This document shows, piece by piece, positions 2,287-62,163 of a stretch of 64,000 nt of DNA (positions are counted from its first letter, which is position 1; each line of letters starts with the position of its first letter). The DNA is from Octopus sinensis (lineage: Eukaryota): positions 39,556,001 through 39,620,000 of the forward strand of contig NC_042998.1 of assembly GCF_006345805.1 (NCBI RefSeq), written 5' to 3'. Under the pieces are notes generated by a model. It was given only the letters and a program-made list of their open reading frames with translations, did no database searches and was not told the origin of the DNA. The position numbers and the translations under genes were made by a program.

Positions 2287-2289
2287 TAT

Positions 2290-5010: not shown

Positions 5011-5042
<32 letters not shown>

Positions 5043-9360: not shown

Positions 9361-9439
9361 AATCATTATTGTGGCCTATGCCGGTGACATATAGCAGCAT
9401 CCATGCTGATGACACGTAAAAGCACCCAGGTGCACTACA

Positions 9440-13545: not shown

Positions 13546-13559
13546 CATCTACTCATAAC

Positions 13560-13667
13560 GAATGTTCCTCTCTTCAGTTTCTGTTGATGTCTTCCTCTCA
13601 TCTTCTTGCCGGACTTTCATTTCTTTGCTAACATTCTCTTTTCCTTACACTTACTGCTCTTTTTCAG
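13560..13667 (+). other. Probable non-coding first exon (5' UTR); start position approximate
   Basis: Ends in TTTTCAG|GTAAGC at 13667/13668, just downstream of two ATTGG boxes, in a locally CpG-retaining region; the next exon (16516-16546) carries the ATG. Confidence 0.5.
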
Positions 13668-15700: not shown

Positions 15701-15800
15701 AGGGTAAAGAGCCGTCTCGCGTGAGGTTTTCGAAAATGCTTACCTCACTTTTGTTGGTCGACACTTGTCCAAGTTAACTCCCCACCCAGTCGGATAACTA

Positions 15801-15846
<46 letters not shown>

Positions 15847-16535
15847 GTGAGAGAGAGAGAGAGGTTGTGTATACCCTGTGGTTATCAAGCTAACCAGAGA
15901 CTAAATAATGACAAACTTGGGAGTCTGTAGTCCTAATCACCATGATTTATTTTTTGAAAATCACACTGGTGCCCAGCTTCCTTAATTCTAATTTGGGGCA
16001 ATTGTTAACCCCAGTTTGCTGCATTTAGACATCCTATATGTTTGACAAGAATGTTTCCTGGACTCCATAAAGACCATTGTCTTGAATGGCTGTTTGCTGC
16101 TCTGCAAATGTATCAAAACTTGCCACAAGCTCCACTCATCTCTTGGCTACGTAGCTTAACTTGATCCTACCACTGCCGCATACACTGACAGCTTTTTCGG
16201 TTCCATTTGCAAGTAACTCTGTTATTCCTTACATTTGAAATTGATAAACAATTTTTATTTATTTTTAATAAATCAATGTCTTAACAAATTTTTTAAAAAA
16301 TCATCCTGAATTGAAGTGATTGGTAGTAAATAATTTTTAATGTTATTTTGTTGAAATTTCAATTTTGGTGAAGAACTTCAAAGCAAGAATTTTCTCCCTT
16401 TTTTTGTAATATTGGTTTAACAGTTTTAATCTGAAAAACATGGGGGTAGGTATAAAGTCTAGAAATTTTTTTCATTTATAAACTATAAAAATTTGTGATA
16501 ATTTTCTATTTTCAGGCAAAACGAAATTTTGAAAT

Positions 16536-16546
16536 ATGTCTAACAG
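16536..16546 (+). CDS. Coding exon 1 (MSN-R); whole exon 16516-16546
   Basis: TTTTCAG acceptor at 16515, AG|GTAAGA donor, phase 2. Confidence 0.75.
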
Positions 16547-19500: not shown

Positions 19501-20574
19501 AGCTGTAATAAGGCTCCTGATCATATCAGTTGTTTAGCATCTTGATTTTAGCTATTGTTCCCATTGTAATGTTCGGGTTGTTTGTTTTCTAGAGCCTCCT
19601 TTGATGTAAATGATTGGAATCCTTTAAAAGAAGCTTACAATAATACAGAGTTCAATAGTTATGACTGCGGACCAGGCAAATATCTTACTATGGGTGAAAG
19701 GTAAATTTCTTTTTCCTTTATTGATATCTGGAAATTTTCAAGGAAATTGTGTGGTATTTAAGGTGCTAGACTGCTGTTGCTGTAATCTGTTCAAATTTCA
19801 TCCAGCCATTGTTTTCTTCCAGGTCATCATCTGCTGGTTATGTCACTTAGTCTCCTCAAATATTCTTAATCTTCAATAAATTGAGCCAATGAAGGAATTT
19901 ATTTGCTTGCCTAACTAGAAATAGCAACTAGATCTCCCATAGATCACACCCTAACCCTATCTTTAAAAAGTCTATGATTTATTTCTAGATGATAGGCCAT
20001 TTGTTACCAGCAAAGGTAGGAGCTCTCTGAACTTTGCCCAGCTTATTTCTATTTTCACAACTATGCTCTTGTAGCCAAGTAATAGAAACTATCAACTACT
20101 TCTAGTTTTCACCCTTGGCATCTGATGGAATCTATTTTCTGTACATTTTTAGTGTTAATTATACCTGTGCATCTGCCACACACAACTATTTTCCCAGTTA
20201 ACCTTCCTCTGATATTGTTGCACCTCTTATGTGTCCATAGCTTACACCGGGTACATCTTATGGAGTTTCTACCTGTCTCTTCTACAGATCAAGCAGGGCC
20301 ATCTATCTGAACGTATTTGTGATTTGTCTGCTTTTCTTATGAGTAGAACTTTGGTTTTTGCTAGGTTAACTTTAAAGTCGTTTGATTCTAGACCTTGCAT
20401 CCACACCTGAAACTTCTCTAGTTCTGTCCCAGAACTAGAGAAGACTAGAACTAGAACAAGCTGCTTTTAGTTTCCTACTAAATCCGCTTCCAAGGTTAGT
20501 GGAACCGAATCCAAAGTCATTTGGTTGGGAAGCAAACTTTGCTTCTCTCTTTCTCTCTCATATGTGAGTGTGTG

Positions 20575-20634
<60 letters not shown>

Positions 20635-23600
20635 CACTCTTTCAGTTTTTGCCAACTAAATCCATTCTTGTGGTTTTGGTTGGCCCAAGGCCATAGTTGG
20701 AGACAGTTCACCAACTGTCCAAGGTTATATGCAGTGTGACTGAATCTGAAACTATAAGATTAACTACACAGCTATGTCTGAGTCTATTATATTTAGAAGC
20801 TTGCTCTGTGTGTGTGTGTGTATGTGTGTGTTTCCTTGTGTCTCCTTGTCTTGTCATGTGATTGTTGTAAACGAGTGTCCCTGTGACATTTGTTTCCAAC
20901 CTTCTGTGAATACATGTCCAGCCATAGGGAAATATTTTCTTGAGCGTTATCAACAAGAAAGGCATCCAGTCATCCACAAAAATGCTTCATTGAATTCCAT
21001 TTGACTCATCCTAATAATAATAGGAGCACTCCATTGGTTGTGACGACAAGCTGATGCGATCAAAGGAACAGCTTGTTTGTGAAATTAACGTGCAAGTGGC
21101 TGAGCACTCCACAAACACGTGTACCCTTAACGTAGTTCTCGGGGAGATTCAGCATGACACAGAATGCAACAAGGCTTGCCCTCCTTTGAATTACAGGTAC
21201 TACTCATTTTCGCCAGCTGAGTGGACTGGGGCATCGTGAAAATAAAGTGTCTTGCTCAAGGACACAACATGCTGCCAGGAATCGAACTCACGACCTTACG
21301 ATTATGAGTTGAATGCCTGAGGCTAGGTTGGAAGAAAGGAGCCAGTCAGGATCTTTTGGACTTGCAGTGTCAATTGCAACACTAATCTCTAAGAGGAAAA
21401 AAGTTCATGAGAAAAGTTAGCTGATGTGTGCAAGAGATCATTGTCTGGGTTGGGCAAGACAAAAGCCTAATGCCCTTGTTGCCAACCTTTGCTTTTCAAC
21501 CAAGGTAAATTTTGTTCCACTGGTATTCAGCTTGAAACTGCCAAGCTGCAGCATTCTTTCTGTGATGTAAAGGAACTTACTGCTGCTCAGAGGTTATGGC
21601 AAGACACACATACACTGTAGGCTGACATACTGTTTCTGTTCTATTAAATTTGATTCACTAAGCTTTTGCCAGTTACCTTTATGAAAATGGAGTTAATGTT
21701 GATGGGTTTCTGAAGTAAAGACGGGTCACTGGAAATCAAAAGAACTGCTTAAAAATACATTGGAATTGTCTAAAGAAAGAGACAAAATAATGAAGCAATT
21801 GATGTGATTCTGTAGCTTTTGCAAATCTGTTGAAATTGTTGCATCAAGGAAAAACAAGGGATCGGATGCCTGAACTAGTTGACTTTCTAAGACTCAAATC
21901 CTTTCCTATGTTAAATCATGTGATGGATGAAAAGCTGGCAAACAGGGATCACTTTGCTTTTAATCGACTCTTTTAGAATTTTTAATATAAATTTATGGAC
22001 TGCTATGTATTGTCATCATCATTATATGTATGCATTTTATAATCTTTTCATATTTTTTTTGTTCTTTGTAGAAAACCTGAATTTGTTGATATTTTTGTAA
22101 GGAATATGCCTCGAAAGTTTACAGAGGTGAGTGGTTTTCTCTGTGAGGATCAGTAAATTTATACTGCCAGAAATGGCAGCTATTTCAACTTGGGTTCTTC
22201 TGTTAGAGACTTTTGCATCCTGGGATTGAGCTGCAGAGATAAAGGTGGTGAGATGTAAATATGTCCTCAAAGTAGGAGTCTAGAAAAGTGAGTGGGTGGA
22301 TTGAAGTTGTAAGGGTGCATGAGGAAAATGAGTGATAATTAGAGATGGGAGTCGGGTGGATAGAGTGAAGAATGACCTCCAGATGTTGCATCTCACAGAA
22401 ATTATGACAAAACAACTGAGATGGTGATTTGTTGTGCACAAGTAAACCTTTCCATTTCAGCAAAATCTAGGTCCTGAAAGTATATCTAGAGTCTGCACAC
22501 CCAATCTGTATCTGTCAAGCCATCCCAGCAAGTCCCCTTCCTAACACACCCATCCTTCTAACTATTGTACTATTTTCTCAGCAGAACTTCATATATTCCT
22601 TCCTTTTTTTGTGCTATGAGTAATCTCACATCTTGAACCCCCTCCCCTTGCCATCCGTCATGCTTCCCCATCATTCCTCAGCATCATGTGTCCACTGGAT
22701 GCTTGTTTTCCCAGAACATCTTCTCTGCTGTCAATGCTACTTGTTTGAACTCTACACTTCATCTCTGTCTTTGTCACTCTGCATCTTCTGTTTCTTCTAC
22801 ATTTCACCCCCCCCCTCTACCTTCTTACTCAGCCTTCCTCAATTTTCTGCCCCTATTCTCTCTCCACTTTCTTCTATCTTGAGGGCATGTGCCCTGATAC
22901 TTCATCTCCACCCTCTTTTCTCCTTTTCATGTTGGCCTATCCATACGTCTCCTCTACAGCCAATCACCTGCTCCTGTTTTCTATACTTTGCACAAAGCCA
23001 CTTTCTTCAATACTGCACCCCAACTCTGTAAAAGAGTCTTGTCTTGTGAGTTACTTGGTGGCCCCACTAGTGTTTATGCTGTGAAGAAAAGTACTTGGTG
23101 TTTAGAAGGTCAAGCCACAGAAATCTTGCTAAAGCAGACACTAGAGACCAACATGGGCCTTGAACCATTTGTTAATGACTCTGTTAATAAATTCTCTTTA
23201 CAAACTGCATGGTTTTGGGTTCAGTCCTGCTGCATGGTACCTTGTGCAAGTGTCTTCTACTATGGCCTTGGCTGATCAAAGCCTTGTGAGTGGATTTGGT
23301 AGATGGAAACTGAAAGAAGCCCAATGTGTGTGTTTGAGAGTATTTTGTGTTGGTATCCTGTCGATTGAGAGTGCCATCATAATGGGAATGGTACCAAATA
23401 TATTTAAGAGTCTTTGAAAACGTATCCAGACAAGTGGAAATACTACCTTGGAAACAGGTGAGGAAGGGCATTCAGCAGGGTTAAACCTGACTTGACAAGG
23501 TGTCTAACCCATTGCAAGCATGATGCTTAATGTACACATGAATGGTTAGTGTTAGGATGGGCAGCCAGATGTAAAAACCATGCCAAAGTAGACAGTGAAG

Positions 23601-26600
23601 CTTGGCACAGTCCTCTGCTACCAGCTCCTGTCAAACCATGCTAGCATGGAAGATGGACATCATTTAACGTCCACTCTCTATGCTGGCATAGGTTGGACAG
23701 TTTGACACGGAGCTGGTTAGCATAGCTGTCTTGTTGTAGCATGGTTTCTACAGCTGGATGCCCTTCCTCATACCAATGACTTACCATATATATTAAGTGA
23801 ATATTACTCTTACCAACATATTCATCATCATCATCATTTTACAACTGTTTTCAGTGTGATATTGAATGTGGTTTGACTGGATTCAATGTGTCAGAGGACC
23901 GTGTCTGCTTCCATTGTCTCATTTTTGATAGGATTTCTGTGGCTGAATGCCCTTCCTAATGCTAATCATTTACAGATTATACTAGGTGCTTCTTTTGGAG
24001 CACCATCATTCTGGGGTTCACCTTTATACATTTTAAACTATGCCTGTGTGTATTTGTCTGTGTTCCATCCCTTCATCTTGAGTGATGTTTTGAATATAAG
24101 AATGGTAGTCTTAATACACCAACTCATTTGTCCTATAGATTAACTAAAATATTCAGATAATGCTGTATGTTATGGATTTCTACATTTTTTTCTTCCCTTC
24201 TTTTACAGGATGGCTTACGAGCACTATTTTCTAAGGCTGGCTATGTACACAGGGTAAAAATATGTCCTGGTAAAAATGGCAAGCCTCCTTATGGGTAGGT
24301 TTATAAATTATTTTATTTTAATGAATGATGTTATTTATGAATTGTCATCCTCGTTGGCAGATTTCTTGGAAATCTACTTTATTGACTGTTCCTTAATCTG
24401 TCAGGATGTTGGAAAAGGTTTACCAATTGATTTTCCCATTAACCCTTTTGGCACCAACCCTCCTGGCACTTCTATTAATCCTATCATATGATATTAAAGT
24501 GATCTAAATTAAGATTTGCCATCAAAACTTCAACATAATGATTATTTTAGTTAATTAAAACCAAAGGCAATGCATTTCAATAGAAATATAACAAAAGTGT
24601 TCTTGGAAGTTGTCTATATGCAGTCACTTCAAGAATACGTTTGGTGAGCTAGTAGTCTAAAAGATTGCAGTTTCAATGTCGTTAGTTATGCTTCCCACAT
24701 TGTAATCTGATGAAGTATACTCTTTTAATCAGATTCTATGTCTATAGAAGTTCAAATTTATCAGTACTGTAGATGGATGGTTTTACCTTATAGAAATGTC
24801 TTTCAGCTTCCTTAACCCCTTTCTCCAGATTCTCTTCAAGTTCATTTCCACCTTATACTGAGGTAATTGTGTGTCTGTTCAGTAGGAAAGAACCCATTGG
24901 TGTTTTTGCTGTTTTTTCAAGTGGATATGTAGTCTCTAGCTTGCATGTTTGCCTGATTAGTACTGGTTGAGGTGAAAGTAATCAGTAGAATCCCTTGAAA
25001 CTAGGCTAGTACTAGCTGAAGCTACTAAATGTACTATAATTACAATAAGAATTTCCTGATATTGAAATGCATTCCTCAAATGGTGTCCTAAATGAATACA
25101 AAGTGTTTCTTAACTTCATTTAGCATTACATTTGGGGTGAATGAGTAATATGTCGACTTTGTTTATGCATTTTGTCCTACTGAAACCCTATATTAAATTC
25201 TTTTAGAGTTCTTTTCCTGCAGATGTTCCATAAACTGTACCAGTCTGACTACAACACATACAGACATCTTTTCTTTCAACTAAATATTTTTTCACTGGTT
25301 TTAGTCAAAATTTAAGAATGGAAAACAAAATGAACCTGGGAAGGATTCACACCTATCACCATGAGAGATAGATAAACGCCACAAGCTTCTACATTTAGAG
25401 AATTTCCAAGGAAGCATGGTCAAGTAGGCTCTTATGATGATGACATGGCAGTGCATGCTAACAAAACATCATATACCTTTCTGTTGCTGATTAGGGTAGT
25501 GAATTATAGCCCCTACATGATATCTTCATATAGATAAGCTACTTTTCTCTGTCCCTTCTATACTTTTAATCTTCCAACTGGCACAAAGCCCCTCAGTACT
25601 ACTCTCCACTCCCAGTTTAGAGGTTTTGTCTTGCAAGGTGCTCGGTGACCCTGTTGTTACTGATGCCATGTAAAAAGCATCCAGTACACTCTGGTTGGCA
25701 TTAGGAAGGGCATCCAGCTGTAGAAACCATGTCAGACCAGATAATGGAACCTGATATGTCAAACCATCCTACCCATGCCAGCATGAAAAACGGATGTAAA
25801 ATGATGATGATGATCGTGACTAGATGATTTCAGAGTTGTATATAACACTGTGAGATTGTTGTAATTTGAACTGGAAGTCCCGACATTGTCTGTTTAGATG
25901 AGATGCAACTGTTAAGGCATTTGTAGCAAGCATGTCTACCCGGCTATTCAGTTTTAAATTATATCAAATGGGCATATTTTGGCATTGTCAACATTTGATC
26001 ATGTGAATAGGGTTGAAGTAAATCTGTTGCAAAGATCGGATGGTCTTAACTAGCCAATCGGTTATTTGAGCAACAGTTTTTATCCCAGCACAGAAAACTC
26101 TCTTCCTGCCCAGCAATCATTATATATAATGTCCCTCACACATTAGAAGAGGAGAAGGAGAGAGAGAGACAAGATCACAGCAACCAAGCAGATATCTTCC
26201 TGTTCATTTCTGTTGCTGATTCTGCCCAGCACACAAAACTAAGTCATGAACATGCTACAGAATTTCAACTATGACACAACTTCCACTGTTCCAGATATAG
26301 TTAGTTAAAATTACCAAACCAGTTACTTTGCAATATGTAAGACATTTGCCATGTTTGTTTACAACAGGTTGTATAATGGTGAGCTGGCAGAAATGTTAAC
26401 GCACCAGGCAAAATGCTTAGCAGTACTTTGTCTGTCTTTATGTTAGTTCAAATTCCGCTGTGGTCGGCTTTGCTTTTCATCCTTTCAGGGTTGATAAATT
26501 AAGTACCAGTTGAGTCCTGGGGGTCGATCTAATTGACTGGCTCCCTCCCCTAAATTTCGAGCCTTATACCTAGAGCAGAAAAGGATATGTAAGACATTTG

Positions 26601-53600: not shown

Positions 53601-56600
53601 CAGTGATATATAGAAAAACAGTGTTATTTTTTTAACAAACTCGCTGGCTAATTGTGACATCAGTTCCGGTTTTGGTACTGTTTTTCAAAATATTGCTGGT
53701 TGGGGAGATGAGTCACTGCTATCTCTAGTGGTTGAGCATCCATCATTGACAAAACCACCGAAGGTCAAAATCATGTGATCTTGTGGTTTTGGTGCTGGAG
53801 ATGGTAGGAATTTCTCACTGCTAGCAATATAAACAAGCATGCATTTTGCAACAAAAACCAGTATGAAACTTGGTATCTACTGCAGTATAATTTGTTCTAG
53901 CAGAACATTCATGTTTAAGTTCTTATTTGATGTCTTCTTTGATGGGTAACGTCTGATGTGACTTAAGGACTCTATATTATCTTTGTTCTTTCACTCATAT
54001 AGTTCTTTTCTTGGCCGAATACTCTCCCTGTCACCAACTACTTTACAGGGTGTTGCTTTTTACACCACCAGCAACTAGAGAAGATTTCTGTGGTTGGGCT
54101 AAAGGCTCTTCTCTTCCCTGTATTATTGTCTTTGGAAGAGGTGCCTGCTGTGTGGCTTGGAAACTCCACATTTTCATTTGCTTATAGTATGATGTAGAGA
54201 TGTAGGTGACAGGCAGACGTTCTTACTGAGAGCCATTAGTCTCAGGACTGATCTGGGATTAAACACTAGCAGTGAATCTATGATCATGTCCATATATGTC
54301 ATTATGTAGTAATGACCAATGTTGAGTTCCATTTCCTTTTAATGAAAAATGGTTACAAGCATCTTTTTGATTTGATGGGTAACTGTTTACTGAGCTCTGT
54401 TCTACAATATTAAAGTTTACAGAATTTATATTAAATAATAATAAGCTAATTGATTTAGCTCTGTAAATTTGTCTGCAGCTGTAGTTGTTTATTATATAAT
54501 ATTAAATTCACATCAGGATCAATAAAATATGTACCAGTCTGGGGTCAATGTGAATGACTTGTCTCCTCTCCTGAACTTTTCTGGCCTTATGCCAAAATTT
54601 GAAACCAACATTAAGTTCACTGGATTTGTAACAAATACTCTTTAATAATTAGTTTAGTAGTAATAAATGCCCTGATGCAGTACCAGGCACTGGCTCTCAT
54701 GGCTTCTGATTTGAACTGATTGCAAGTATTATCATGTACATTGTTTTGTCTTGGTATAAAAGATTGGCTACAACAAGTATTCTGCACAATACCACAGATT
54801 TGCTTGACCGTAACCAGTTGATTATGGCCTATGATATGTGTATCTCTGATGATGAGCAGAAGTAGTGCTTGGGCATCATAGCCATGTATTGAGAGGAATT
54901 CTTTGGGGTTTGAATTATTCACCTCTGGAAACATGGGTGTTTCATTCATCATCCTTAAACAACCTTTATTCAGAGACATTTTGGGTTAACTGGGCCCCAC
55001 CTGCAAGGTTATGCATTGTTTATCTTGATATGAGGTCACCATGTTGCACACATGTGGTTGTGATGCATGTGCCTGGTGTAAAGTTATCAAATGGGTGGTC
55101 ATGTTGAGTATATTCATCATTGCCCTCATCATTTAATGTCTGTTTTCCATGCTGGTATGGGTTGGATGGTTTGACAGAAAACTAGGGAGTTGCACTAGGT
55201 TCCAATCTGATTTGGCATGGTTTCTACACCTGTATGCCCTTCCTAACACCAACCACTCCAAGAGTGTAGTGGTTGCTTTTTATGTACCACCAGCATGGGT
55301 GCCAGTTATGAAACACTGGCATTAGCCACAACAATGATCTCACTTGGTTTGACAGATCTTCTCAAGCACGGTATATGGCCAAAGTTCAAAGGGTGCTTTT
55401 TATGTGCCACTGGCACAGGTGTCATTTATGTGTCTCTGCCATTGGCTACAACTATGATGTCATTTGGCTTGATGTGTCTTCTCAGGCACAGCCTACTACC
55501 CTACATTTGATGGGCTGCTTGTTACGTGTTACGACTGCGGTTTCACTTGGCTTGACAGGTCTTCTCAGTCATGGCATATTTGCCAAAGGTCTCGGTCAAT
55601 TCATCACCTCGTCCTATGTCTTCCTGGGCCTACCTCTTGCACAGGTTCCCTCCACACTTGGAGATTGGCACTTCTTTACACAGCTGTCCTTGTCGTCCAT
55701 ATGCATCTCGGCAATCTCACCAGACCTACCTTTCAGTGTGCCTACATTGACAGTGCCAACTTTGAAAACTGGGGAAGGGATGTGGGAGGGAACATAGGAA
55801 ATTGGGACAGTATTCAGCACCCGGGGAAAAGGTTTGGATTTCATATATTTATACCTTAGTGCCACTTTGATGACATGCATTGCTCTCTCAGTCAATAATA
55901 ATAATAATCCTTTCTACTGGAAGCATAAGGCCTCAAATTTGGGTAAGTTGGCGGGAATCTATTACATCAATCCCAGTTCTTGGCTGGGATTTATTTTATC
56001 AAACCTGAAAGGATTAAAAACCTCAGTGAACCATGGCAGAATTTGAACAAAGACCATAAAGATGAATGAAATATGTCTAAGCATTTTGTGCAGCATGCTA
56101 GCTCACTGCCTTATTAATGATAATAACAATAATGAGATATGCATATAATATCACAGTTCTGTAATGTCTTTATTCTTGTCATTTGATTTTTGTGTGATTT
56201 GCAGTTTTCCATGTTTAAAAGTTACCGTTTTCTCTTCAGCTATGGAAGCTTTGACTGATATGACTGAACAATTGAATAAGATGTGTGAGGCTTCTCATCT
56301 GAATCCAGTAATCCAGCCCGAGATTGGAGAAGTTGTTTGTTGTAAATATTCAGGTAAGTTTTAGTTTCAAATAAATCAGGGTTGTTTTTTTTCCTTGTAA
56401 ACTATTTGTTCTCAAGTGGGGACAGGAGCCTAGTAGAGTAAAAGAGGAATTAAAGGAGTCCATAAAAAGAAAAAAAAAATGGTTGAGCATACTGCTGTTG
56501 ACTGAAATGATGTTTGTAGAAGTTAAAGTTAAGAAAATATCAAAAATTAAAGTTAATTCTCTGATTTCAGGAATTGTGAAATGTGTTAATGATGACAGCC

Positions 56601-59600
56601 ATAACATAGGCAACTAGTTCCTCCTCTCTTGCATTGTTCCAAGCTGGCTGTGATCAGACGCATCCTAACCCTGTAAATATCAAGTATAACTTATGAGCTA
56701 GGAACAGTTGTGGCAAGAATTTAATGTTCTGCTAAAAACAGCATAATAGAAGTTGTATTTTGTGAAACAAAATGAATATTGCTCGTCAATAACCTGTTTA
56801 GATCAAACTAATAAATGTGGGACTTGTAAGTAAGTCTTGTTAATGAATTAACATTTCCCTCATAACAGACTCAATTTTTGGTTTTTTTTTAACAAATCGT
56901 CATTGTTTAACATCCGCCTTCCATGTCTGATCACAGCCAGCTTGGAACAGTGCAAGAGAGGAGGAACTAGTGAGGCTAAAGCTTTGTAACCACAAATGTT
57001 TCAACATTTTAATTCAATCCTGAATTACCATTTTGATTCATAATTCCGAATCGTTTGAAGATTTTATTTCATTGTTTTTACAGATGGAAAATGGTACCGA
57101 GCTAAAGTGATGGCAGCTTCCAAGGCAGAATTTTCTGTATTTTATGTTGATTTTGGTTGTAGTAGTAGAGTTACCCAAGACGAGATAATGCCTCTCACAG
57201 ATGAGTTGGCAGAAATACCGATATTAGCAGCTCGATGTTCTTTGGCGGGTAAATACATTAAACTTTCTTTTAATTAATCCAAGATTTTATTTTGCATGAT
57301 AATTTTTTCCCCTCTAAAACAATATTCATGTAATTAGGTTGGTTTACAAAATTCAGTTTTTTGTATGAATTTCTGAAGATCGGTCCTCACCACTTCATCC
57401 AATGTTTCCTTGGGTCTCCCTCTTACACAGGTGCTATCTACTTTCAGTGATTGGCACTTTATACACCTGTCTTCATTCATACACATCTCCTGTCCAAACC
57501 AACGGTTTTCTCTCTTGTATCTGATTCCTTTTATGCCCAACTTTTTTCTTAACAAATTGGTACTTTGTCGTCTGTGCACATTGATGTACATGCAATGGGG
57601 CTTACTACCTTTATTCCTCTCTAGTCTACACAAGGTTTCTGCATTCAGAGCCCATGTCTCACCACCATGGAGTATAGCTGTTCATATGCAAGCATCATAC
57701 ATTTTACCTTTCACTCAGAGAGTCCTTTTCTTGCCAACAGAGGTAAAAGCTCTTTCAGCTTCCTCCACCTTATTCTCATTCTAGAAATATTACTTTCAGA
57801 ACTTCCTCCACCATTGCTAATTTGGTCACCTAGGTAACAGAGACTATCAATTACCTCAAGAGAGCCTTCTGGACAATTTGAAAGAGTCTAATTCTTGTGT
57901 GTCCTTAGTGTTTAATTATTCCTTTACATCTGTCACACAAGAAGACTACTTTATCTATTAACCCTTTCATTTCCATATTTCTAACCAAAATACACCCCTT
58001 ATGTGTTTCAATTAATTTCTAACATAATCATAAATTTAGTCTGGTTTCATTAAACTTTTTTATTTATCAACATATTAATGTGATTTTTGGGAGATAATTT
58101 AACGAAAGGTTCTCAACCAACCCTATACCATAATTTTTGTCTCAAAGTGACTCGAATCAACAAAATACAAAATTATTAAAATTTTTGTTCAAACATCGCT
58201 ATTGAAAATGGGTTATTAGCTAATATTCAATTGGGTATACAACAAAATTTTACTATAGAAGAGTTGTGCACATTACTGGATTCATCAGGTGAATTTAACC
58301 ACACAAAAGACAGGTGTACCATAAAGGTATAAGTAAAACAAAAGACTGGAATTTGCCTGTGAAGAAAACTAGAAAACAAAATACACACACACTATCAACT
58401 AGATTAAATAAGCTCTCCCACATACATAGATACACAGAAATATACAATAATGATTTACAAAAGAAATTAATCAAAATTCATCACTCACCTTACAGGTAAA
58501 TTAAAATTACACATAAAATAAAAATAAAAACGAAGTAAATTTGAAAATATTTATAAAATCAAATCACACATATATACAAATCAAACAATATTCCTATCAT
58601 GAAAACTTGCACCCTGCTCTACATAATGCACATTGGAAAGTTGTTTCAACAGCCCTGCCACTAGGAGCTTTTGTTTTTTGATGAAGGCATTTGCAACGCT
58701 GCTTTTTTCTAATTTATGGAGATCGGCTGAATTCAGAAGGATATCCCACTGGCAGGCTTTGTTTTTTCTCCCTACAATTATTTTTTTTTTAGGAATAACC
58801 AGCTCTTAATTGTGTTGCTACATCTGCACAGAACTGAAGATGGTCACATCACTTTTGAGCCAATCCCAGTTTGGCATATAGTATAAGTGCATTAGTAATA
58901 TTCACATTTACTATATACCAAACCAGGTATCGCCACCATTTATTCCCTGGTCTGCCAACTGGATAGGAAGACATCATCTGATTCAGCCGATCTACACCAC
59001 CCATGTACCTGTTTTAATCGAGGTTCACAAACGGCGTGCCATTTTTATCCACATGTGGCTGTGCACAGGTAGACAGAAAATTGATCTGCCCCCTATCTCT
59101 GTATGCGGTCGCTGGCAAATTACCTTTCTGCTGTTGAATTTCACCTTTTATTTTTAATTTTGCTTTTTTTATATCCAACGGCAGTCATTTTCTGCTAGAG
59201 ATCACTGTAGCACATGTATGTGTTGCCACAGTATCTAAATTCTCCACAAGTTTGACCGGACTGGAAAATCGGTCAAAAAATAATATATGGCTGTGATTAT
59301 AGTATGGAAGTGATAAATTCCGAACCACATCATACCCTAAGCCATGTTGACTTACATAATTGTCTCATTTTCCAGTATAAAATTCAAATCCAGAGCAGTA
59401 CCCAGGGTTTGATTCACAAATCTTCCACACTTTGATCCCCCATTTTGTGGCCTTTCCTGGCATATATTGTCAAAAACATATTCGGCCTTTATAGCCCACC
59501 ATACCCTCATCAATAGATAAATATCTCCCTGGTTTATAAACTGTTTTATGTGTTTTGAACACAGTCAATGAGGGGTCTTATTTTAAATAAGGGATCAAAG

Positions 59601-62163
59601 TCTGGTTCTCCACATGCTGGTGTACTGCTTGTATCTCTTATTTGTAGATACTGAGTCAATTTTAAAAATTGTGTCCTCATCATTATACTTAAGACATATT
59701 CATCTCCAAAGGGTTCATCGCTACTCTAGTAATTTGTTATTCTGGGTAGCTTGCTAATGCCCATAATAACATTTATGGCAAAATATACCTTTATTTCATG
59801 TAAGCTTGTGGGAAACCACAAACTATTCTTTTTTTTGCTTTGTTTACTTTCAGCTTAACGGTTTGTTTCCGCTGTAATGATTTCAAATAAGCTCATAGGT
59901 AAAAGTAAAAGGAAATAGTCTAAAGCTTTGCTCTCCTGGGAAAGACTGTGACTTGGTCCAGTTTCTTCAGGAAAATCACTGAAAGAAACAGTTTTAAAAT
60001 TTTTTACTCCATTCAGGTGCCAAGTCATTTTCTTTATTGCTGTCATCGGAGCTCTTGGATTCACTGCTTTCACTTTCGGAAAATGAAACATCAGATTCAT
60101 AATCAAATACCATGTGTTTTTTTATTATTATTTTTATTTGTTTATTTTTTTTTTTTATAGCTATAGAGTTAGATTTATCAAGGTCTTCAGTGGAAAATCC
60201 TTCGAATTCTGACTTGCTGCTTGACAGAATGAAATTCATATCCATTCTTTGTTAGAATTACAAATTTTCAAAACACAGCAGGGACAAATTTGGAAAAAAA
60301 ATCTCCCAAAATTCACAGAATTAAAATTACTCGTCAATCGTTGTACAAAACTGTAACTGAACTGTTTGCGCAGTATAATCACGTGTTTTCACGAATGTAC
60401 TGAGATTTGCCCTGATATTCTCGTTTAAATATGAATATGTGATTACGGGCAGTTTTGGGTGGCTTTGGTAATGAAAAGGTTAATCTACTGTAATTCCACT
60501 GCTCCTCTTATGTGTCCATAGCTTACACTGGGTGCATTGAATGGAATTACTTCTAACTCTTTTCCTACATATTGATGGAAAGAGTCTTATCTGCTTTCTG
60601 TCTTTTCGTTTATTTAGGATTTGGCCAATCTTTTTATCCCTTGCCACGAATAATTCTGCAAAAATTAAACACTGAAATTCTTTTCCATTTCATTTAGGTG
60701 AATCAAAAGAAAAGTGGACAAAAGAGAAGCTCCTTCAACTTCGGGAACAACCAATCAATGTTGAAGTGGTTGGTGAAACTCTGAATTCTTACAGTATTGT
60801 CTTGGAGGAGGACTTTGAGGACGAGGACGAAAGGGCAACAAATTCTACATCACCATCAAATGAAAGTGTTTCTGGTAAGTTTCTGATTTCATTTTCCTTA
60901 GAAAAAGAAGAAATTCAAAGATTTGGTGATTTGAGACACAGTAAAAAGTCCAAATGTTTTCTGATGTCAAAATGGTTGGAAGAGGAGATCTTGTAGGCAT
61001 TGTGTTGTTCAGATTCTCTATCAACGTACATAACTTACTCCAGTTCACTGATCAAAAGGCTTCGGTCTCCCTTTCATTAGTGATATAAAGGACAACTGGT
61101 TACTGAAAACATTTCATCTCCTAGATGTCATTGCGAATGACCAGATTGAGAACACAATTAACAAAGCCACCACCATTGCTCACAAGAAAGTATCTTGGAA
61201 AAATATCCATTTCCAGAACTCCTGGTCAAGGCTGGAGAGTACATCAGCCGAAACATGATAACAGCAAACAAGATAACACCTGTCTGTCCATTGTAAATAA
61301 TGTATACAGGCATTGGATATTGAAACATTTGGAGCTGTGAGACCATATGTAATAGCAGCCAAAAGAAGTAATCTTTTGTTGGTAAAGATACTCTCACTGA
61401 TGGGTTCAAGAGAGACAATGTTTAAAGCATTTGTCTTTCCCCTTCACTTACAATCTGGGTCTCCCACTAAATAGTCCTTAATTGCAGTTATAGATGTACA
61501 GGTGTTCAATATGAACATTAAGGGCCATTTCTGTCTGGGAAACAGAGAGGAACCCTAGAGTTTGTGACTCTGTTCTCTATCTTGCTGGGTGGAAAGCTTT
61601 AGGGAGACTTGTACTGTTGCACCCATGAAGGGTGTTGATGAGATACTCTGATTTATCTTACATACAAAATTAGTTTGAATCATCACCCTCCCCTTTCTAA
61701 GGGGGTTACAGCTATGTCTGATAGTTTTACTAACCCTAACACTAAGACAGAGTGTGACAGAAAAACCTGCTGTATCTCACACTGCCATTAATGTGGCACT
61801 TGTAACACTTGGCGGGTGTCTATGTGTTTCCTGTTGAACTGGTAAATCACTGTGTAGATGTAGTTCATTCTCATCATTTAACATCCGTTTTTCATGCTGG
61901 CATGGGTTGGATGGCTTGACAATGAGCTGGAAAGCTGTTCAGGCTCCATTGTTTTGACATGGTTTCTAAGGCTGGATGTTCTTCCCAATGCCAACCACTT
62001 TACACAGTGTACTGGGTGTTTTTAATGTAACACCAGCATAGGTGCTCTATACATAAAAGACAGGACAACAAATTAAAATAAACATTTTTTTTTTTTTGCA
62101 GCCAAAGAACTAATTCTCCAACAGATTGAAGAATTAAAGAAGAAGCTAGAATCAATGGATTAA
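16536..62163 (+). CDS. Spliced gene (22 coding exons, about 1356 aa): RRM + partial MYND finger + 4 extended Tudor domains; Vreteno/TDRD1-like piRNA-pathway scaffold
   Basis: All 21 introns are GT-AG and exon phases chain without a frameshift (4071 nt including stop). ATG at 16536 has an in-frame TGA upstream (16530-16532). RNP2/RNP1 (IFVRNM, PYGFVTY), CSNC..YCS..CQ..DW...H...C and Tudor WYR/DFGN motifs are split over exons. Family assignment is from domain architecture, not from a search. Confidence 0.9.
17400..17820 (+). mobile_element. 5'-truncated RTE 3' UTR copy with GAT tail; related copies at about 11784-12010(-), 18850-18990(-), 25620-25815(+), 27120-27430(-), 29210-29430(+), 40270-40420(-), 41790-41900(-), 42500-42686(+), 43300-43430(-), 47340-47500(-), 51095-51215(+), 61870-62040(-)
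   Basis: Shared core GGAGTGGTTGGC.TTAGGAAGGGCATCCAGCTGTAGAAAC...CCAACCCATGC.AGCATGGAA...GTTAAA(TGA)n. Confidence 0.8.
19593..19700 (+). CDS. Coding exon 2 (ASFDVNDWNPLKEAYNNTEFNSYDCGPGKYLTMGE)
   Basis: TTTTCTAG acceptor, AAG|GTAAAT donor, 108 nt, phase 2-2, open. Confidence 0.8.
20125..20460 (-). mobile_element. RTE ORF2 fragment covering the PHD-like insert
   Basis: Minus strand WPCLIC...RNSIRCTRCKLWTHKRC...CGRCTG, homologous to 3458-3600. Confidence 0.8.
21010..21320 (-). mobile_element. tRNA-derived SINE (family 2); second copy at about 39480-39760
   Basis: Minus-strand B-box-like GTGAGTTCGATTCC, shared CTTGCTCAAGGACAC core and TTA tail. Confidence 0.65.
22072..22126 (+). CDS. Coding exon 3, RRM RNP2 (KPEFVDIFVRNMPRKFTE)
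   Basis: TTTGTAG acceptor, GAG|GTGAGT donor, phase 2-0. Confidence 0.9.
23180..23530 (+). mobile_element. tRNA-derived SINE (family 3); copies at about 20690-20980(+), 32990-33120(+), 38520-38885(-)
   Basis: GGGTTCAGTCC B-box-like motif and shared CAAGTGTCTTCTACTAT...GTGAGTGGATTTGGTAGATGGAAACTGAAAGAAGCCC core. Confidence 0.7.
24209..24294 (+). CDS. Coding exon 4, RRM (DGLRALFSKAGYVHRVKICPGKNGKPPYG)
   Basis: TTTTACAG acceptor, GG|GTAGGT donor, phase 0-2. Confidence 0.92.
26374..26584 (+). mobile_element. tRNA-derived SINE (family 1) flanked by a ~41-bp direct repeat; copies at about 37650-37830(+), 55915-56110(-)
   Basis: A-box TGGCAGAAATG, B-box GTTCAAATTCC; flanks 26333-26373 and 26585-26625. 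Confidence 0.75.
26848..26983 (+). CDS. Coding exon 5, RRM RNP1 and C-terminal half (FVTYAQLNEAEVAISKFNNLKIAGDEPLNVKLS...)
   Basis: TTTTCAG acceptor, TTG|GTTAGT donor, phase 2-0. Confidence 0.92.
29770..29835 (+). CDS. Coding exon 6 (QESAFFKNVHSRIDSSNESDSE)
   Basis: TTTTCAG acceptor, GAG|GTAAGA donor, phase 0-0. Confidence 0.82.
29890..32554. mobile_element. piggyBac-related non-autonomous element carrying a nested RTE-3'UTR concatemer
   Basis: 29895-30000 matches the left end and 32390-32554 the right end of the piggyBac at 57962-60479; ends GGTATCAAAAGGG|TTAT; left TIR not found. Confidence 0.6.
30196..32152 (+). repeat. Head-to-tail concatemer of four RTE 3'-end units containing a 61-63-bp VNTR
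   Basis: AAGACTAGTCAG unit starts at 30196, 30764, 31141, 31420; CTGTGTCGGTGGCAC modules at 31711, 31773, 31835, 31898, 31961; ends in a (GAT)n tail. Confidence 0.88.
34594..34619 (+). CDS. Coding exon 7, 26-nt micro-exon (DNYSDSET-R)
   Basis: Long pyrimidine tract + CAG, AAG|GTAAGG donor, phase 0-2 bridges exons 6 and 8. Confidence 0.78.
35397..35461 (+). CDS. Coding exon 8 (PRYSRSEKSNDKYAQHSISSA)
   Basis: TTCCAG acceptor, T|GTATGT donor, phase 2-1. Confidence 0.75.
36200..37620 (-). mobile_element. L2-group (Crack/Daphne-like) LINE RT remnant
   Basis: Minus strand NFAKSSFPPL.NNDG, TKLFNLSLST, PGNY...TS..SQVIETVIN, ISDHHY.F, VIDISKAF; heavily decayed. Confidence 0.75.
38218..38448 (+). 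CDS. Coding exon 9, Ser/Lys-rich low-complexity linker
   Basis: T-tract + CCAG acceptor, CAG|GTAATT donor, 231 nt open, phase 1-1. Confidence 0.85.
41447..41546 (+). CDS. Coding exon 10, MYND-type zinc finger C-terminal part (ATKRCSNCKVPYCSIRCQTKDWTNGHEKRC)
   Basis: TTTCAG acceptor, TAG|GTATGA donor; matches the MYND pattern C-x2-C-x3-YC-x3-CQ-x2-DW-x3-H-x3-C. Confidence 0.92.
42048..42135 (+). CDS. Coding exon 11 (NMSLQELADRFDVDLNLNTSGNKSKFKDN)
   Basis: TTCTTAG acceptor, AAT|GTGAGT donor, phase 2-0. Confidence 0.82.
43562..43915 (+). CDS. Coding exon 12, Ser/Lys/Pro-rich linker into extended Tudor 1
   Basis: TTTCAG acceptor, CAG|GTTGGT donor, 354 nt open; it is the inner part of ORF 43334..43954. 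Confidence 0.87.
44234..44332 (+). CDS. Coding exon 13, N-terminal SN-like part of extended Tudor 1 (VLVTYINELNIFVQL...)
   Basis: TTTAAAG acceptor, GAG|GTGAGT donor, phase 0-0. Confidence 0.9.
44460..44687 (+). CDS. Coding exon 14, Tudor 1 core (ACVFSEDGVWYRA...KYVDFGNCE)
   Basis: Canonical Tudor motifs; TTTCAG / CAG|GTAAAT. Confidence 0.96.
44965..45216. mobile_element. piggyBac-type MITE
   Basis: Ends GGTAACAAAAGGGTTA, resembling the piggyBac TIR+TTAA ends in this window; left end degenerate. Confidence 0.45.
45316..45472 (+). CDS. Coding exon 15, C-terminal part of extended Tudor 1 (AVCCVLSLP...)
   Basis: TTTGTAG / TG|GTAAGT, phase 0-1; continues P.QA..C.L after Tudor 1. Confidence 0.9.
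45619..45727 (+). CDS. Coding exon 16 (DGNKINKKIVSSLDL...)
   Basis: TTTCATCAG / AA|GTAAGT, phase 1-2. Confidence 0.87.
47029..47229 (+). CDS. Coding exon 17, N-terminal part of extended Tudor 2 (VIDVKSPEDFLVQ)
   Basis: Long T-tract + CAG / AT|GTAAGT, phase 2-2; V..V.SP..F.VQ motif typical of extended Tudors. Confidence 0.92.
48036..48690 (-). mobile_element. RTE 3' end: ORF2 C-terminus + 3' UTR with 62/61-bp alternating VNTR + GAT tail
   Basis: Minus strand DLWKYAVREKTRQDQ* followed by (AAAATC)n, five modules starting (plus-strand coordinates) at 48211, 48273, 48334, 48396, 48457, then the common tail. Confidence 0.88.
48740..49240 (+). mobile_element. RTE ORF2 C-terminal remnant
   Basis: Homologous to 4285-4650 (GGAGG..GATGCTCCAAGAG; GGCCATGTGATGCATATGGAC). 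Confidence 0.75.
49578..50805 (-). mobile_element. Full-length degenerate mariner (cecropia/Hsmar1-like) transposon
   Basis: 22-bp TIR TTGGGTTGGCAACTAAGTTCCC with 1 mismatch at the other end, TA on the left; transposase pieces 50278-50667 and 49773-50259 (HTH, SGRP, WVLHAL, ITGNEKW, DNAHPH, YSPDL); frameshifted, catalytic D1 and D3 read as N. Confidence 0.93.
51329..52761 (+). CDS. Coding exon 18 (1433 nt): Tudor 2 core, complete extended Tudor 3, Ser/Arg/Pro linker, start of extended Tudor 4
   Basis: Inside ORF 51249..52769; T-tract TTGCAG acceptor; donor G|GTCAGT chosen over GAA|GTGGGT because it matches the phase of the next exon; AAKFSQDNQWYRG...FFVDYGN. Confidence 0.93.
53377..53915. 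mobile_element. Fold-back element/MITE with ~225-bp inverted arms
   Basis: 53377-53600 is the inverted complement of about 53690-53915 (e.g. CTTGTTTATATTGCTAG, TTGTCAATGATGGA, CTAGAGATAGCAG blocks). Confidence 0.88.
55128..55800 (-). mobile_element. Internally deleted RTE copy (endonuclease N-terminus fused to ORF2 C-terminus + 3' UTR)
   Basis: Minus strand KVGTVNVGTLKGRSGEIAEM joined directly to HMDDKDSCVKKCQ...RGRPRKT, then the common 3' UTR and tail. Confidence 0.75.
56240..56353 (+). CDS. Coding exon 19, extended Tudor 4 (MEALTDMTEQLNKMC...PEIGEVVCCKYS)
   Basis: TTCTCTTCAG / CAG|GTAAGT, phase 1-1. Confidence 0.92.
57084..57248 (+). CDS. Coding exon 20, Tudor 4 core (DGKWYRAKV...FYVDFGC...LAARCSLA)
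   Basis: TTTTTACAG / GG|GTAAAT, phase 1-1. Confidence 0.95.
57380..57840 (-). mobile_element. RTE ORF2 C-terminal remnant
   Basis: ORF 57334..57633 LLRKKLGIKGI...WFGQ...RGRPKET. Confidence 0.75.
57962..60479 (-). mobile_element. Full-length degenerate piggyBac transposon
   Basis: TTAA at both ends (57958-57961, 60480-60483); TIRs CCCTTTCATTTCCA / CCTTTTCATTACCA; minus-strand LSIDEGMVGYKGR, QYMPGKATKWGIKVW, FFDRFSS, NRYMGGVDRLNQ, C-terminal YTCLLCG; several stops. Confidence 0.92.
60698..60874 (+). CDS. Coding exon 21, end of extended Tudor 4 plus acidic tract (EEDFEDEDE)
   Basis: CATTTAG / TG|GTAAGT, phase 1-1. Confidence 0.88.
62102..62163 (+). CDS. Terminal coding exon (AKELILQQIEELKKKLESMD*)
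   Basis: T13-GCAG acceptor, phase 1, TAA at 62161-62163; amphipathic helix. Confidence 0.85.

What the first reader, a model, noticed from the sequence alone, without database searches (positions are those of the whole stretch)
16536..62163. Hidden 22-exon gene with a combined Vreteno/TDRD1 architecture (RRM + MYND + four extended Tudors)
The ORF track shows only Tudor fragments. Manual splicing recovers an RRM split over three small exons, a MYND exon and four Tudor cores in one frame of about 1356 aa. Established layouts: Drosophila Vreteno has RRM, degenerate MYND and 2 Tudors; vertebrate TDRD1 has MYND and 4 Tudors without an RRM; TDRD10 has RRM and Tudor. This protein has all the modules together, so it could represent an ancestral-type form linking these families and a lophotrochozoan piRNA-biogenesis scaffold. 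The function is inferred.
Basis: partly seen in the sequence, partly recalled or inferred. Interest (0 to 1): 0.75.

Follow-up and report, generated by a model that had tools for sequence, protein, structure and literature searches.

The report
Octopus TDRD1 gene, already annotated
The window holds a real multi-exon gene for a germline-type scaffold protein (RRM, MYND finger, four Tudor domains), but it is the TDRD1 gene already annotated in Octopus sinensis, and other molluscs and a tick have the same layout, so it is an ordinary member of a known family.

Summary
On the + strand, from the ATG at 16536 to the stop ending at 62163, GT-AG introns join 23 coding exons, not 22; a 26-nt micro-exon lies at 34594-34619. 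The reading frame is 4119 nt (1372 aa) with no internal stop. The protein is letter-for-letter identical to RefSeq XP_036368170.1, [quoted passage not shown], so the gene is not hidden from public annotation. Pfam finds RRM_1 (aa 47-111), zf-MYND (271-307) and four Tudor domains.

The same RRM + MYND + multi-Tudor order occurs in scallops (5 Tudors), mussels (8), a clam (6) and the tick Haemaphysalis (5). All of these start with the same short motif, W[DN]P..FN[ST]Y..GPG. The literature already treats insect Vreteno/Veneno (RRM + MYND + 2-3 Tudors) and vertebrate TDRD1 (MYND + 4 Tudors) as homologues.

The "ancestral-type" reading is therefore reasonable for protostomes, but it is not special to this gene and is untested outside them. 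A per-domain Tudor tree did not resolve the octopus domains. I could not retrieve any Vreteno or TDRD10 sequence.

A role as a PIWI/piRNA scaffold is inferred from homology and from intact aromatic cages in Tudors 1 and 3. Tudor 2 is degenerate, and Tudor 4 has Cys in place of the cage Asn. Interest is low.

The parts
16536..16546 (+). Coding exon 1: ATG TCT AAC AG (MSN + 2 nt). An acceptor-like ttttcag sits 20 nt upstream, so a further 5'UTR exon is possible.
   Evidence: donor gtaaga
19593..19700 (+). Exon 2 (aa 4-40): encodes the conserved N-terminal motif W[DN]P..FN[ST]Y..GPG (aa 12-32). It is a cassette exon, skipped in annotated isoform X4.
22072..22126 (+). Exon 3 (aa 40-58): RRM strand beta1 with RNP2 (IFVRNM)
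24209..24294 (+). Exon 4 (aa 59-87): RRM helix alpha1 and strand beta2
26848..26983 (+). Exon 5 (aa 87-132): RRM RNP1 (PPYGFVTY), alpha2 and beta4
29770..29835 (+). Exon 6 (aa 133-154): acidic/Ser linker
34594..34619 (+).
   Evidence: identical peptide in O. bimaculoides
35397..35461 (+). Exon 8 (aa 163-185): linker
38218..38442 (+). Exon 9 (aa 185-260): Lys/Ser-rich linker. Skipped in isoform X5. The alternative donor at 38448 gives isoform X1 (+GS).
40209..40262 (+). Exon 10 (aa 260-278): first CxxC of the MYND finger
41447..41546 (+). Exon 11 (aa 278-311): rest of the MYND finger (CxxC..C..C..H..C)
42048..42135 (+). Exon 12 (aa 311-340): linker
43562..43915 (+). Exon 13 (aa 341-458): disordered basic/Ser-rich linker
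44234..44332 (+). Exon 14 (aa 459-491): N-terminal (SN-like) part of extended Tudor 1
44460..44687 (+). Exon 15 (aa 492-567): Tudor 1 core, aromatic cage F-Y-Y-F plus Asn intact
45316..45472 (+). Exon 16 (aa 568-620): C-terminal SN-like part of extended Tudor 1
45619..45727 (+). Exon 17 (aa 620-656): end of eTudor 1 and inter-domain linker
47029..47229 (+). Exon 18 (aa 656-723): N-terminal part of extended Tudor 2
51329..52761 (+). Exon 19 (1433 nt, aa 723-1201): Tudor 2 core (degenerate cage L-A-L-F-A), the whole of eTudor 3 (cage F-Y-F-Y-N intact), a Ser-rich linker and the start of eTudor 4
56240..56353 (+). Exon 20 (aa 1201-1239): eTudor 4, first half of the core
57084..57248 (+). Exon 21 (aa 1239-1294): eTudor 4 core (cage Y-Y-Y-F, Asn replaced by Cys)
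60698..60874 (+). Exon 22 (aa 1294-1353): SN-like C-terminal part of eTudor 4 and an acidic tail
62102..62163 (+). Exon 23 (aa 1353-1372 plus stop): C-terminal helix AKELILQQIEELKKKLESMD, conserved among molluscs

Best explanation
This is the Octopus sinensis orthologue of the TDRD1/Vreteno family. It is a 23-coding-exon gene spanning 45.6 kb that encodes a 1372-aa modular scaffold.

Shown:
- The gene structure and the intact ORF.
- Exact identity to RefSeq TDRD1 isoform X2.
- The domain content: an N-terminal short motif, a canonical RRM, a complete MYND zinc finger, four extended Tudor domains and a C-terminal helix.
- The same collinear layout in bivalves and a tick.

Inferred mechanism, by homology with mouse and zebrafish TDRD1 and with insect Vreteno/Veneno:
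- In germline granules (nuage), extended Tudors 1 and 3 have a full aromatic cage plus Asn. They are predicted to dock symmetrically dimethylated arginines in the N-terminal tails of PIWI proteins.
- Tudor 4 (Asn to Cys) probably binds more weakly.
- Tudor 2 has lost its cage and would act as a methylation-independent protein-binding surface, as described for cage-less eTudors of Vreteno.
- The MYND finger mediates protein contacts and granule localisation.
- The RRM either holds the target/precursor RNA, as shown for BmVreteno-L, or docks a TDRD12-type helicase, as shown for Drosophila Vret RRM with BoYb/SoYb.

Together these would bring loaded and empty PIWI proteins and an RNA substrate close to each other for piRNA amplification.
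For: Gene model and ORF.

Exact match to XP_036368170.1 (O. sinensis TDRD1 X2), in a cluster with the O. vulgaris and O. bimaculoides proteins.

Pfam RRM_1, zf-MYND and 4x TUDOR.

Best solved-structure matches are TDRD1 extended Tudors (5m9n, 4b9w, 4b9x) and Drosophila Tudor. HuR and Sxl match the RRM, and DEAF1 matches the MYND.

AlphaFold model of aa 1-134: a canonical beta-alpha-beta-beta-alpha-beta RRM, with 10-residue block mean pLDDT of 80-91 over aa 41-120. Foldseek's top hits are RNA-bound RRMs such as HuR and Fox-1.

Cage residues per Tudor.

Domains are more conserved than linkers. Against Argonauta, domains are 55-68% identical and linkers 36-40% over aligned positions; against O. 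bimaculoides, domains are 88-98% and linkers 84-92%.

Same architecture in Mizuhopecten, Ylistrum, Mytilus, Mactra and Haemaphysalis.

Family functions come from the literature: PMC10711660 (BmVreteno; Tdrd1 as the Vreteno homologue), PMC12526068 (Vret is closest to mouse TDRD1; RRM binds the BoYb/SoYb helicase; MYND and eTud1 bind the CS domain), PMC6411831 (Aedes Veneno: RRM + MYND + 2 Tudors, sDMA-dependent Ago3 binding, MYND needed for granules, Tdrd1 the closest mouse orthologue).
Against: There are no expression, localisation or binding data for the octopus protein, so the function rests on homology alone.

The per-domain Tudor tree gave no supported placement of any octopus Tudor with a particular TDRD1 Tudor.

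Whole-protein E-values to vertebrate TDRD6 and TDRD1 are similar.

NCBI names for close relatives are inconsistent: TDRD15, TDRD1, TDRD6-like, maternal tudor-like.

No Vreteno or Veneno sequence could be fetched, so I did not test sequence-level kinship of the RRM and the N-terminal motif with the insect proteins.
Confidence: 0.85

Rival explanations
1. The protein is not a TDRD1/Vreteno orthologue. On this view it is a lineage-specific multi-Tudor protein of the TDRD6/Tudor/TDRD15 group that picked up an RRM and a MYND finger by exon shuffling, so its likeness to TDRD1 and Vreteno is convergent.
For: Among named vertebrate hits, Callorhinchus TDRD6 (E=1.3e-50) scores slightly better than the fish TDRD1s (about 1e-48). 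NCBI calls the relatives TDRD15, TDRD6-like and maternal tudor-like. The Tudor-domain tree does not tie octopus domains to TDRD1 domains. The GBE 2025 study could not separate TDRD1/2/4/5/6/7/15 into clean orthogroups (PMC12147562).
Against: In the family table of PMC12147562, MYND is listed as an accessory domain only for TDRD1 (and fly CG9684/CG9925) among the multi-Tudor families. The order N-motif, RRM, MYND, Tudors is identical in molluscs and a tick and, for RRM, MYND and Tudors, in insect Vreteno/Veneno, which the literature already assigns to TDRD1. In the domain tree, the last bivalve Tudors group with vertebrate TDRD1 T2-T4 (SH-aLRT 93), and the first bivalve Tudors group weakly with TDRD1 T1. 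The best PDB hit is human TDRD1.
Confidence: 0.1
2. The RRM exons and the MYND/Tudor exons belong to two separate neighbouring transcripts, and the single ORF is a modelling artefact.
For: The Argonauta hians annotation splits the locus into two adjacent models: Ahia01_000002600 (RRM part, P0325) and Ahia01_000002700 (partial MYND plus 4 Tudors, P0002). No RNA data could be examined here.
Against: All 22 introns have matching phases, and the joined frame has no stop over 4119 nt. All five RefSeq isoforms of O. sinensis, the three of O. bimaculoides and the O. vulgaris model keep the RRM and Tudors together. Short Logan contigs of 4.4-5.0 kb encode complete 1408-1415-aa RRM + MYND + 5-Tudor proteins closely related to the tick protein, so they must be transcripts that join the modules. 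The Argonauta model P0002 starts in the middle of the MYND finger, which is the mark of a truncated model.
Confidence: 0.03
3. The locus is a decaying or non-functional copy.
For: Tudor 2 has lost its aromatic cage, and Tudor 4 has lost the cage Asn. The introns are full of transposon remains.
Against: The 1372-codon frame is intact and all splice sites are canonical. The protein is 91.5% identical to O. bimaculoides, and domains are better conserved than linkers. The degenerate Tudor 2 itself is 94% conserved between the two Octopus species, and its cage loss is shared with Argonauta and cuttlefish. That indicates a retained, changed function rather than decay.
Confidence: 0.02

Closest known systems
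Vertebrate TDRD1 (mouse, zebrafish; structures 4b9w, 4b9x, 5m9n)
   Same: An N-terminal MYND finger is followed by four extended Tudor domains in a protein of similar size (about 1150-1370 aa). TDRD1 is the best solved-structure match. RefSeq names the octopus protein TDRD1. Tudors 1 and 3 have the same cage residues as the TDRD1 Tudors.
   Different: The octopus protein carries an N-terminal motif plus an RRM before the MYND, which vertebrate TDRD1 lacks (Pfam columns; PMC10711660). Its Tudor 2 has no cage, and its Tudor 4 has Cys for Asn, whereas nearly all (15 of 16) vertebrate Tudors examined are canonical. One-to-one orthology of the four Tudors is unresolved.
Insect Vreteno / Veneno (Drosophila, Bombyx, Aedes)
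   Same: The order RRM, then MYND, then extended Tudors is the same. The literature calls these the closest relatives of mouse TDRD1 (PMC12526068, PMC6411831, PMC10711660). Some of their Tudors also lack an aromatic cage.
   Different: The insect proteins have only 2-3 eTudors in about 690-790 aa. Both Drosophila Vret Tudors lack intact cages (PMC12526068), while octopus keeps two intact ones. Bombyx makes an RRM-less short isoform, but no annotated octopus isoform drops the RRM. I could not make a direct sequence comparison because no Vreteno sequence was retrieved.
Bivalve and tick RRM + MYND + multi-Tudor proteins (Mizuhopecten XP 'TDRD1-like', Ylistrum XP_060063570.1, Mytilus XP_076103467.1, Mactra, Haemaphysalis XP_077556063.1)
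   Same: They have the identical domain order and the identical N-terminal motif W[DN]P..FN[ST]Y..GPG. The molluscs also share the C-terminal QQI..L..L helix. These are the true closest relatives.
   Different: They have more Tudors (5, 5, 8, 6 and 5), and most of those (25 of 29) have canonical cages. Their linkers are longer and Gly/Arg/Tyr-rich, and Mactra also has a CCHC knuckle. Identity to octopus is only 22-27%.
TDRD10 (vertebrates)
   Same: It has an RRM combined with a Tudor domain.
   Different: It has a single Tudor and no MYND (table in PMC12147562). I did not test any relationship between the RRMs.

Membership tests
TDRD1/Vreteno family (MYND + extended Tudor piRNA scaffolds) | MYND-type zinc finger N-terminal to the Tudor array, with all Zn ligands present | tested here: met
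   Pfam zf-MYND covers aa 271-307 and profile positions 1-39/39, E=4.7e-07. The pattern CxxC-x7-CxxC-x4-C-x3-C-x8-H-x3-C can be read in the sequence.
TDRD1/Vreteno family (MYND + extended Tudor piRNA scaffolds) | Several extended Tudor domains (Tudor core plus SN-like flanks, about 180 aa each) | tested here: met
   There are four stretches of 179-193 aa: 443-633, 664-856, 862-1040 and 1165-1349. Pfam TUDOR scores E=9.4e-80 with 4 stretches.
TDRD1/Vreteno family (MYND + extended Tudor piRNA scaffolds) | Aromatic cage (4 aromatics plus Asn) for sDMA binding in at least some Tudors | tested here: met
   T1 is FYYFN and T3 is FYFYN, both intact. T4 is YYYFC (Asn to Cys). T2 is LALFA (lost). The mapping was checked against the TDRD1 5m9n alignment.
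TDRD1/Vreteno family (MYND + extended Tudor piRNA scaffolds) | Phylogenetic placement with TDRD1 and Vreteno/Veneno rather than TDRD6/Tudor or RNF17 | tested here: inconclusive
   In the domain tree of 64 eTudors, no octopus domain falls in a supported clade, and the branches are long. No Vreteno sequences were available.
TDRD1/Vreteno family (MYND + extended Tudor piRNA scaffolds) | Binds PIWI proteins, localises to nuage, and is needed for piRNA biogenesis | not testable with these tools
   This needs co-IP, imaging, and knock-down in octopus gonad or a heterologous assay.
Vertebrate-type TDRD1 | MYND + 4 eTudors with no RRM | tested here: not met
   An RRM is present at aa 47-111. None of the vertebrate TDRD1 hits carries PF00076.
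Insect-type Vreteno | N-terminal RRM before the MYND finger | tested here: met
   RRM_1 scores E=1.9e-12 in the full protein and 7.2e-14 in the N-terminal piece. The fold is canonical. The RNP1 and RNP2 aromatics are present.
Insect-type Vreteno | Only two or three eTudors in a protein of about 700 aa | tested here: not met
   There are four eTudors in 1372 aa.
Insect-type Vreteno | Sequence-level kinship of the RRM and N-terminal region with Vreteno | not tested
TDRD15 / TDRD6 (names NCBI gives to the O. bimaculoides and Mytilus relatives) | A multi-Tudor protein without accessory MYND or RRM domains (table in PMC12147562) | tested here: not met
   Both MYND and RRM are present, so these names look like best-hit artefacts.
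TDRD10 | RRM plus a single Tudor and no MYND | tested here: not met
   The protein has four Tudors and a MYND.

The most novel reading that the evidence does not exclude
The ancestral protostome, and perhaps bilaterian, TDRD1/Vreteno protein had a conserved N-terminal short linear motif (W[DN]P-x5-[YF]-x4-FN[ST]Y-x2-GPG), an RRM, a MYND finger and four or more cage-competent extended Tudors. Vertebrate TDRD1 would then be a form that lost the motif and the RRM, and insect Vreteno/Veneno a form that lost Tudors. The N-terminal motif has not been described in the papers searched. It is predicted to be disordered and is removed by skipping one cassette exon in octopus, so it would be a regulated docking site for an unknown partner.
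Probability: 0.5. Interest if true: 0.4.

Novelty: already known. Interest (0 to 1): 0.2.

Why it matters
As a gene it adds nothing new, because it is already in RefSeq under the right family name.

There is modest value in three side observations:
- Molluscs and a tick share one full RRM + MYND + multi-Tudor layout. This gives a concrete picture of how vertebrate TDRD1 (no RRM) and insect Vreteno (few Tudors) could both derive from one richer ancestor. It also bears on the question raised in PMC10711660 of how RRM-less TDRD1 obtains its RNA.
- All of these proteins begin with the same short motif, which alternative splicing can remove in octopus.
- Coleoid cephalopods have a conserved cage-less Tudor 2.

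These are leads for anyone studying piRNA scaffolds outside flies and mice. None is surprising to a specialist.

Tried and rejected
1. A profile of the N-terminal motif plus RRM was searched against 1.84 billion representatives. The top-150 list was swamped by multi-RRM proteins such as PABP-like ones. Only four relevant proteins appeared (P0003, P0147, P0171, P0242), so it gives no usable taxonomic census.

2. I ran two alignment-based searches of the 5.8-billion-protein database, one full-length and one of the N-terminal halves to reach Vreteno-sized proteins. Both reached only molluscs, plus generic RRM proteins. No Vreteno, Veneno, TDRD10, deuterostome-invertebrate or cnidarian relatives were retrieved, because the word index is too insensitive at this divergence.

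3. A per-domain maximum-likelihood tree of 64 extended Tudors left the octopus domains unresolved, with long-branch warnings. It cannot decide one-to-one orthology with TDRD1 Tudors.

4. I first joined exon 6 to exon 8 directly. The only in-frame option read through the strong donor GAG|gtaaga. I rejected it once the 26-nt micro-exon was found.

5. The cuttlefish 717-aa model P0324 looked like a natural Vreteno-sized form. Inspection showed a model that lacks the Tudor 1 core and Tudor 3, so it is probably mis-annotated.

6. Rfam and tRNA scans of the window found nothing.

7. Literature searches for a description of this layout in molluscs or ticks found none.

Full report
WHAT IS IN THE SEQUENCE. 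The window is AT-rich (35-42% GC) and looks like animal genomic DNA. The bacterial-style ORF list and stop-free segments on the + strand show isolated coding-looking pieces. A first Pfam scan of ten pieces found Tudor matches at 44.4, 51.2-52.8, 56.1 and 57.1 kb, a MYND finger at 41.4 kb and a weak RRM piece at 26.8 kb.

I made a crude concatenation of these pieces and searched it against the 5.8-billion-protein collection. The top hit was a 1372-aa Octopus bimaculoides protein (P0001, XP_014772425.1) whose precomputed Pfam domains are RRM_1, zf-MYND and TUDOR. Next came a partial Argonauta model, bivalve proteins and many vertebrate TDRD1 and TDRD6 proteins.

GENE MODEL. tblastn of P0001 on the window gave 21 collinear blocks on the + strand. 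For each gap I scanned GT/GC donors and AG acceptors and scored the joined translation against P0001. All junctions except one were unambiguous.

Between 29835 and 35397 the phases did not fit. A search for a small AG...GT exon with the right phase found a 26-nt micro-exon at 34594-34619. It encodes DNYSDSET, identical to the O. bimaculoides peptide.

Exon 1 is ATGTCTAACAG|gtaaga at 16536-16546, joining to 19593. The assembled CDS has 23 exons, 4119 nt and 1372 codons, with a single terminal stop ending at 62163. Every intron is GT-AG, and the protein is 91.5% identical to P0001.

An exact-sequence look-up then showed that this protein is already in the public collection as XP_036368170.1, [quoted passage not shown]. 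It sits in a 90% cluster with four further O. sinensis isoforms (1297-1374 aa), three O. bimaculoides isoforms and an O. vulgaris protein that differs at three residues. The window is therefore O. sinensis DNA, and the gene is annotated.

Its exon count (22) misses one exon, most likely the micro-exon. Its length (about 1356 aa) is close. Its "MYND exon" is really two exons.

DOMAINS. On the spliced protein, Pfam finds RRM_1 at 47-111 (E=1.9e-12), zf-MYND at 271-307 (full model length) and TUDOR in four stretches (E=9.4e-80). An iterated local HMM delimits four extended Tudors of about 180-190 aa at 443-633, 664-856, 862-1040 and 1165-1349.

The best solved-structure relatives are TDRD1 extended Tudors (5m9n, 4b9w, 4b9x) and Drosophila Tudor. 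HuR, Sxl and PABP match the RRM, and DEAF1 matches the MYND.

An AlphaFold model of residues 1-134 gives a confident canonical RRM, with strands at 45-50, 71-77, 86-91 and 116-120 and helices at 58-65 and 94-104. The first 40 residues are predicted with low confidence. Foldseek puts the model among RNA-bound RRMs such as HuR and Fox-1. RNP2 (IFVRNM) and RNP1 (PPYGFVTY) keep their aromatic residues.

Aligning all Tudors to one HMM and reading the five cage positions gives the following:
- T1 is F-Y-Y-F-N and T3 is F-Y-F-Y-N, both intact.
- T4 is Y-Y-Y-F-C.
- T2 is L-A-L-F-A.

T2 degeneracy is shared by O. bimaculoides, Argonauta and, by eye, cuttlefish. The T4 Asn-to-Cys change is shared by the octopods but not by cuttlefish. 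Nearly all Tudors of vertebrate TDRD1, bivalve and tick relatives are canonical.

Domains are better conserved than linkers between octopods, as expected for a working gene.

RELATIVES AND THE "ANCESTRAL FORM" IDEA. The architecture is not peculiar to this protein. The following all have RRM + MYND + Tudors in the same order:
- Mizuhopecten "TDRD1-like" (1700 aa, 5 Tudors).
- Ylistrum "maternal protein tudor-like" (1653 aa, 5).
- Mytilus "tudor domain-containing 6-like" (2195 aa, 8).
- Mactra (2030 aa, 6, plus a CCHC knuckle).
- The tick Haemaphysalis longicornis LOC144170259 (1400 aa, 5).
- Closely related Logan transcript contigs.

Pinctada has RRM + 7 Tudors with no detected MYND.

Every one of these proteins begins with the same short motif, W[DN]P-x5-[YF]-x4-FN[ST]Y-x2-GPG. 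In octopus the motif is encoded entirely by exon 2, which annotated isoform X4 skips. Molluscs also share a C-terminal QQI..L..KL helix encoded by the last exon.

Finding the same collinear layout and the same terminal motif in both Lophotrochozoa and Ecdysozoa argues for common descent rather than repeated shuffling. It therefore points to an old, at least protostome-wide, layout.

The literature already states the following:
- Tdrd1 is the closest mouse orthologue of Aedes Veneno, which has RRM + MYND + 2 Tudors (PMC6411831).
- Fly and silkworm Vreteno and fish and mouse Tdrd1 are homologues with different domain organisations, and the RRM-less vertebrate form raises the question of how it receives RNA (PMC10711660).

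I could not test it further. Two more database searches and one exhaustive HMM search returned no Vreteno, TDRD10, deuterostome-invertebrate or cnidarian relatives. The per-domain tree left the octopus Tudors unplaced. In that tree, the bivalve last Tudors grouped with vertebrate TDRD1 T2-T4 (SH-aLRT 93) and the bivalve first Tudors grouped weakly with TDRD1 T1. A 2025 survey likewise could not split TDRD1/2/4/5/6/7/15 into clean groups (PMC12147562). No paper in the searchable library describes this layout in molluscs or ticks.

HOW IT PROBABLY WORKS. This part is inferred.
- By analogy with TDRD1 and Vreteno/Veneno, the protein is a multivalent scaffold of perinuclear germ granules.
- Tudors 1 and 3 would bind dimethyl-arginine marks on PIWI N-termini.
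- The cage-less Tudor 2 would bind a partner independently of methylation. In BmVreteno, two of its three eTudors lack an intact cage, and eTD1 binds Gtsf1L (PMC10711660). [quoted passage not shown]
- The MYND finger would mediate protein contacts and granule localisation, as in Veneno (PMC6411831).
- The RRM would either hold the RNA substrate, as the BmVreteno-L RRM does (PMC10711660), or dock a TDRD12-type helicase, as the fly Vret RRM does (PMC12526068).
- The N-terminal motif and the C-terminal helix have no known function.

SURROUNDINGS. The introns carry transposon remains: a mariner-type transposase on the minus strand at 49.8-50.7 kb and several arrays of a 62-66-bp repeat in both orientations. 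Upstream of the gene I found only a reverse-transcriptase fragment (2.9-3.4 kb) and low-complexity DNA. There were no Rfam families or tRNAs.

VERDICT. The gene is an already annotated member of a known family, so interest is low. The shared N-terminal motif and the mollusc-tick distribution of the full layout are minor leads.

Noticed in passing
window 19593-19700 (exon 2, aa 12-32): The short N-terminal motif W[DN]P-x5-[YF]-x4-FN[ST]Y-x2-GPG is conserved in every RRM + MYND + multi-Tudor protein retrieved: octopods, cuttlefish, scallops, mussels, pearl oyster, clam and tick. AlphaFold predicts it as disordered. It is removed exactly by skipping exon 2 in annotated isoform X4 (also in the O. 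vulgaris model). I found no description of it in the papers searched.
   Followed up: partly
window 51329-51500 (Tudor 2 core) and 57084-57248 (Tudor 4 core): Extended Tudor 2 has lost its aromatic cage (L-A-L-F-A) in O. sinensis, O. bimaculoides, Argonauta and apparently cuttlefish, yet it is 94% conserved between the two Octopus species. Tudor 4 has Cys in place of the cage Asn in octopods only. Vertebrate TDRD1, bivalve and tick Tudors are almost all canonical.
   Followed up: partly
window 62102-62163 (exon 23): The C-terminal amphipathic helix (..ILQQIEELKKKLESMD) is conserved in octopus, Argonauta, cuttlefish, scallops, Mytilus and Mactra, but is absent from the tick protein. It may be an oligomerisation element.
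   Followed up: no
window 34594-34619: A 26-nt coding micro-exon (DNYSDSET) lies between introns of 4.8 kb and 0.8 kb.
   Followed up: yes
window 49828-50667, minus strand (intron 18): A mariner/Mos1-type transposase remnant in two ORF pieces: HTH_48 at E=1.3e-16 and Transposase_1 at E=2.3e-16.
   Followed up: partly
window 17417-17598, 30370-30744, 31576-31981, 48205-48544 (introns): Arrays of a 56-66-bp tandem repeat containing ...GGTGGCACA(T/C)AA..., present in both orientations in several introns. This is probably an octopus-specific repeat or SINE-derived satellite. It generates the long spurious ORFs seen in the ORF list.
   Followed up: no
window 2909-3367, + strand: A reverse-transcriptase (RVT_1, E=2e-07) fragment of a retroelement upstream of the gene. 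No other coding signal was found in 1-16500.
   Followed up: partly
related proteins P0325 + P0002 (Argonauta hians), P0324 (Acanthosepion pharaonis): Public annotations of this gene are inconsistent. Argonauta has it split into two adjacent models, the second starting inside the MYND finger. The cuttlefish model (717 aa) lacks the Tudor 1 core and Tudor 3. NCBI names for orthologues range over TDRD1, TDRD15, TDRD6-like and maternal protein tudor-like.
   Followed up: partly
window 11155-11368 and 12134-12250: A perfect 105-bp tandem duplication (2 copies, 100% identical) and a GA-rich low-complexity tract upstream of the gene.
   Followed up: no
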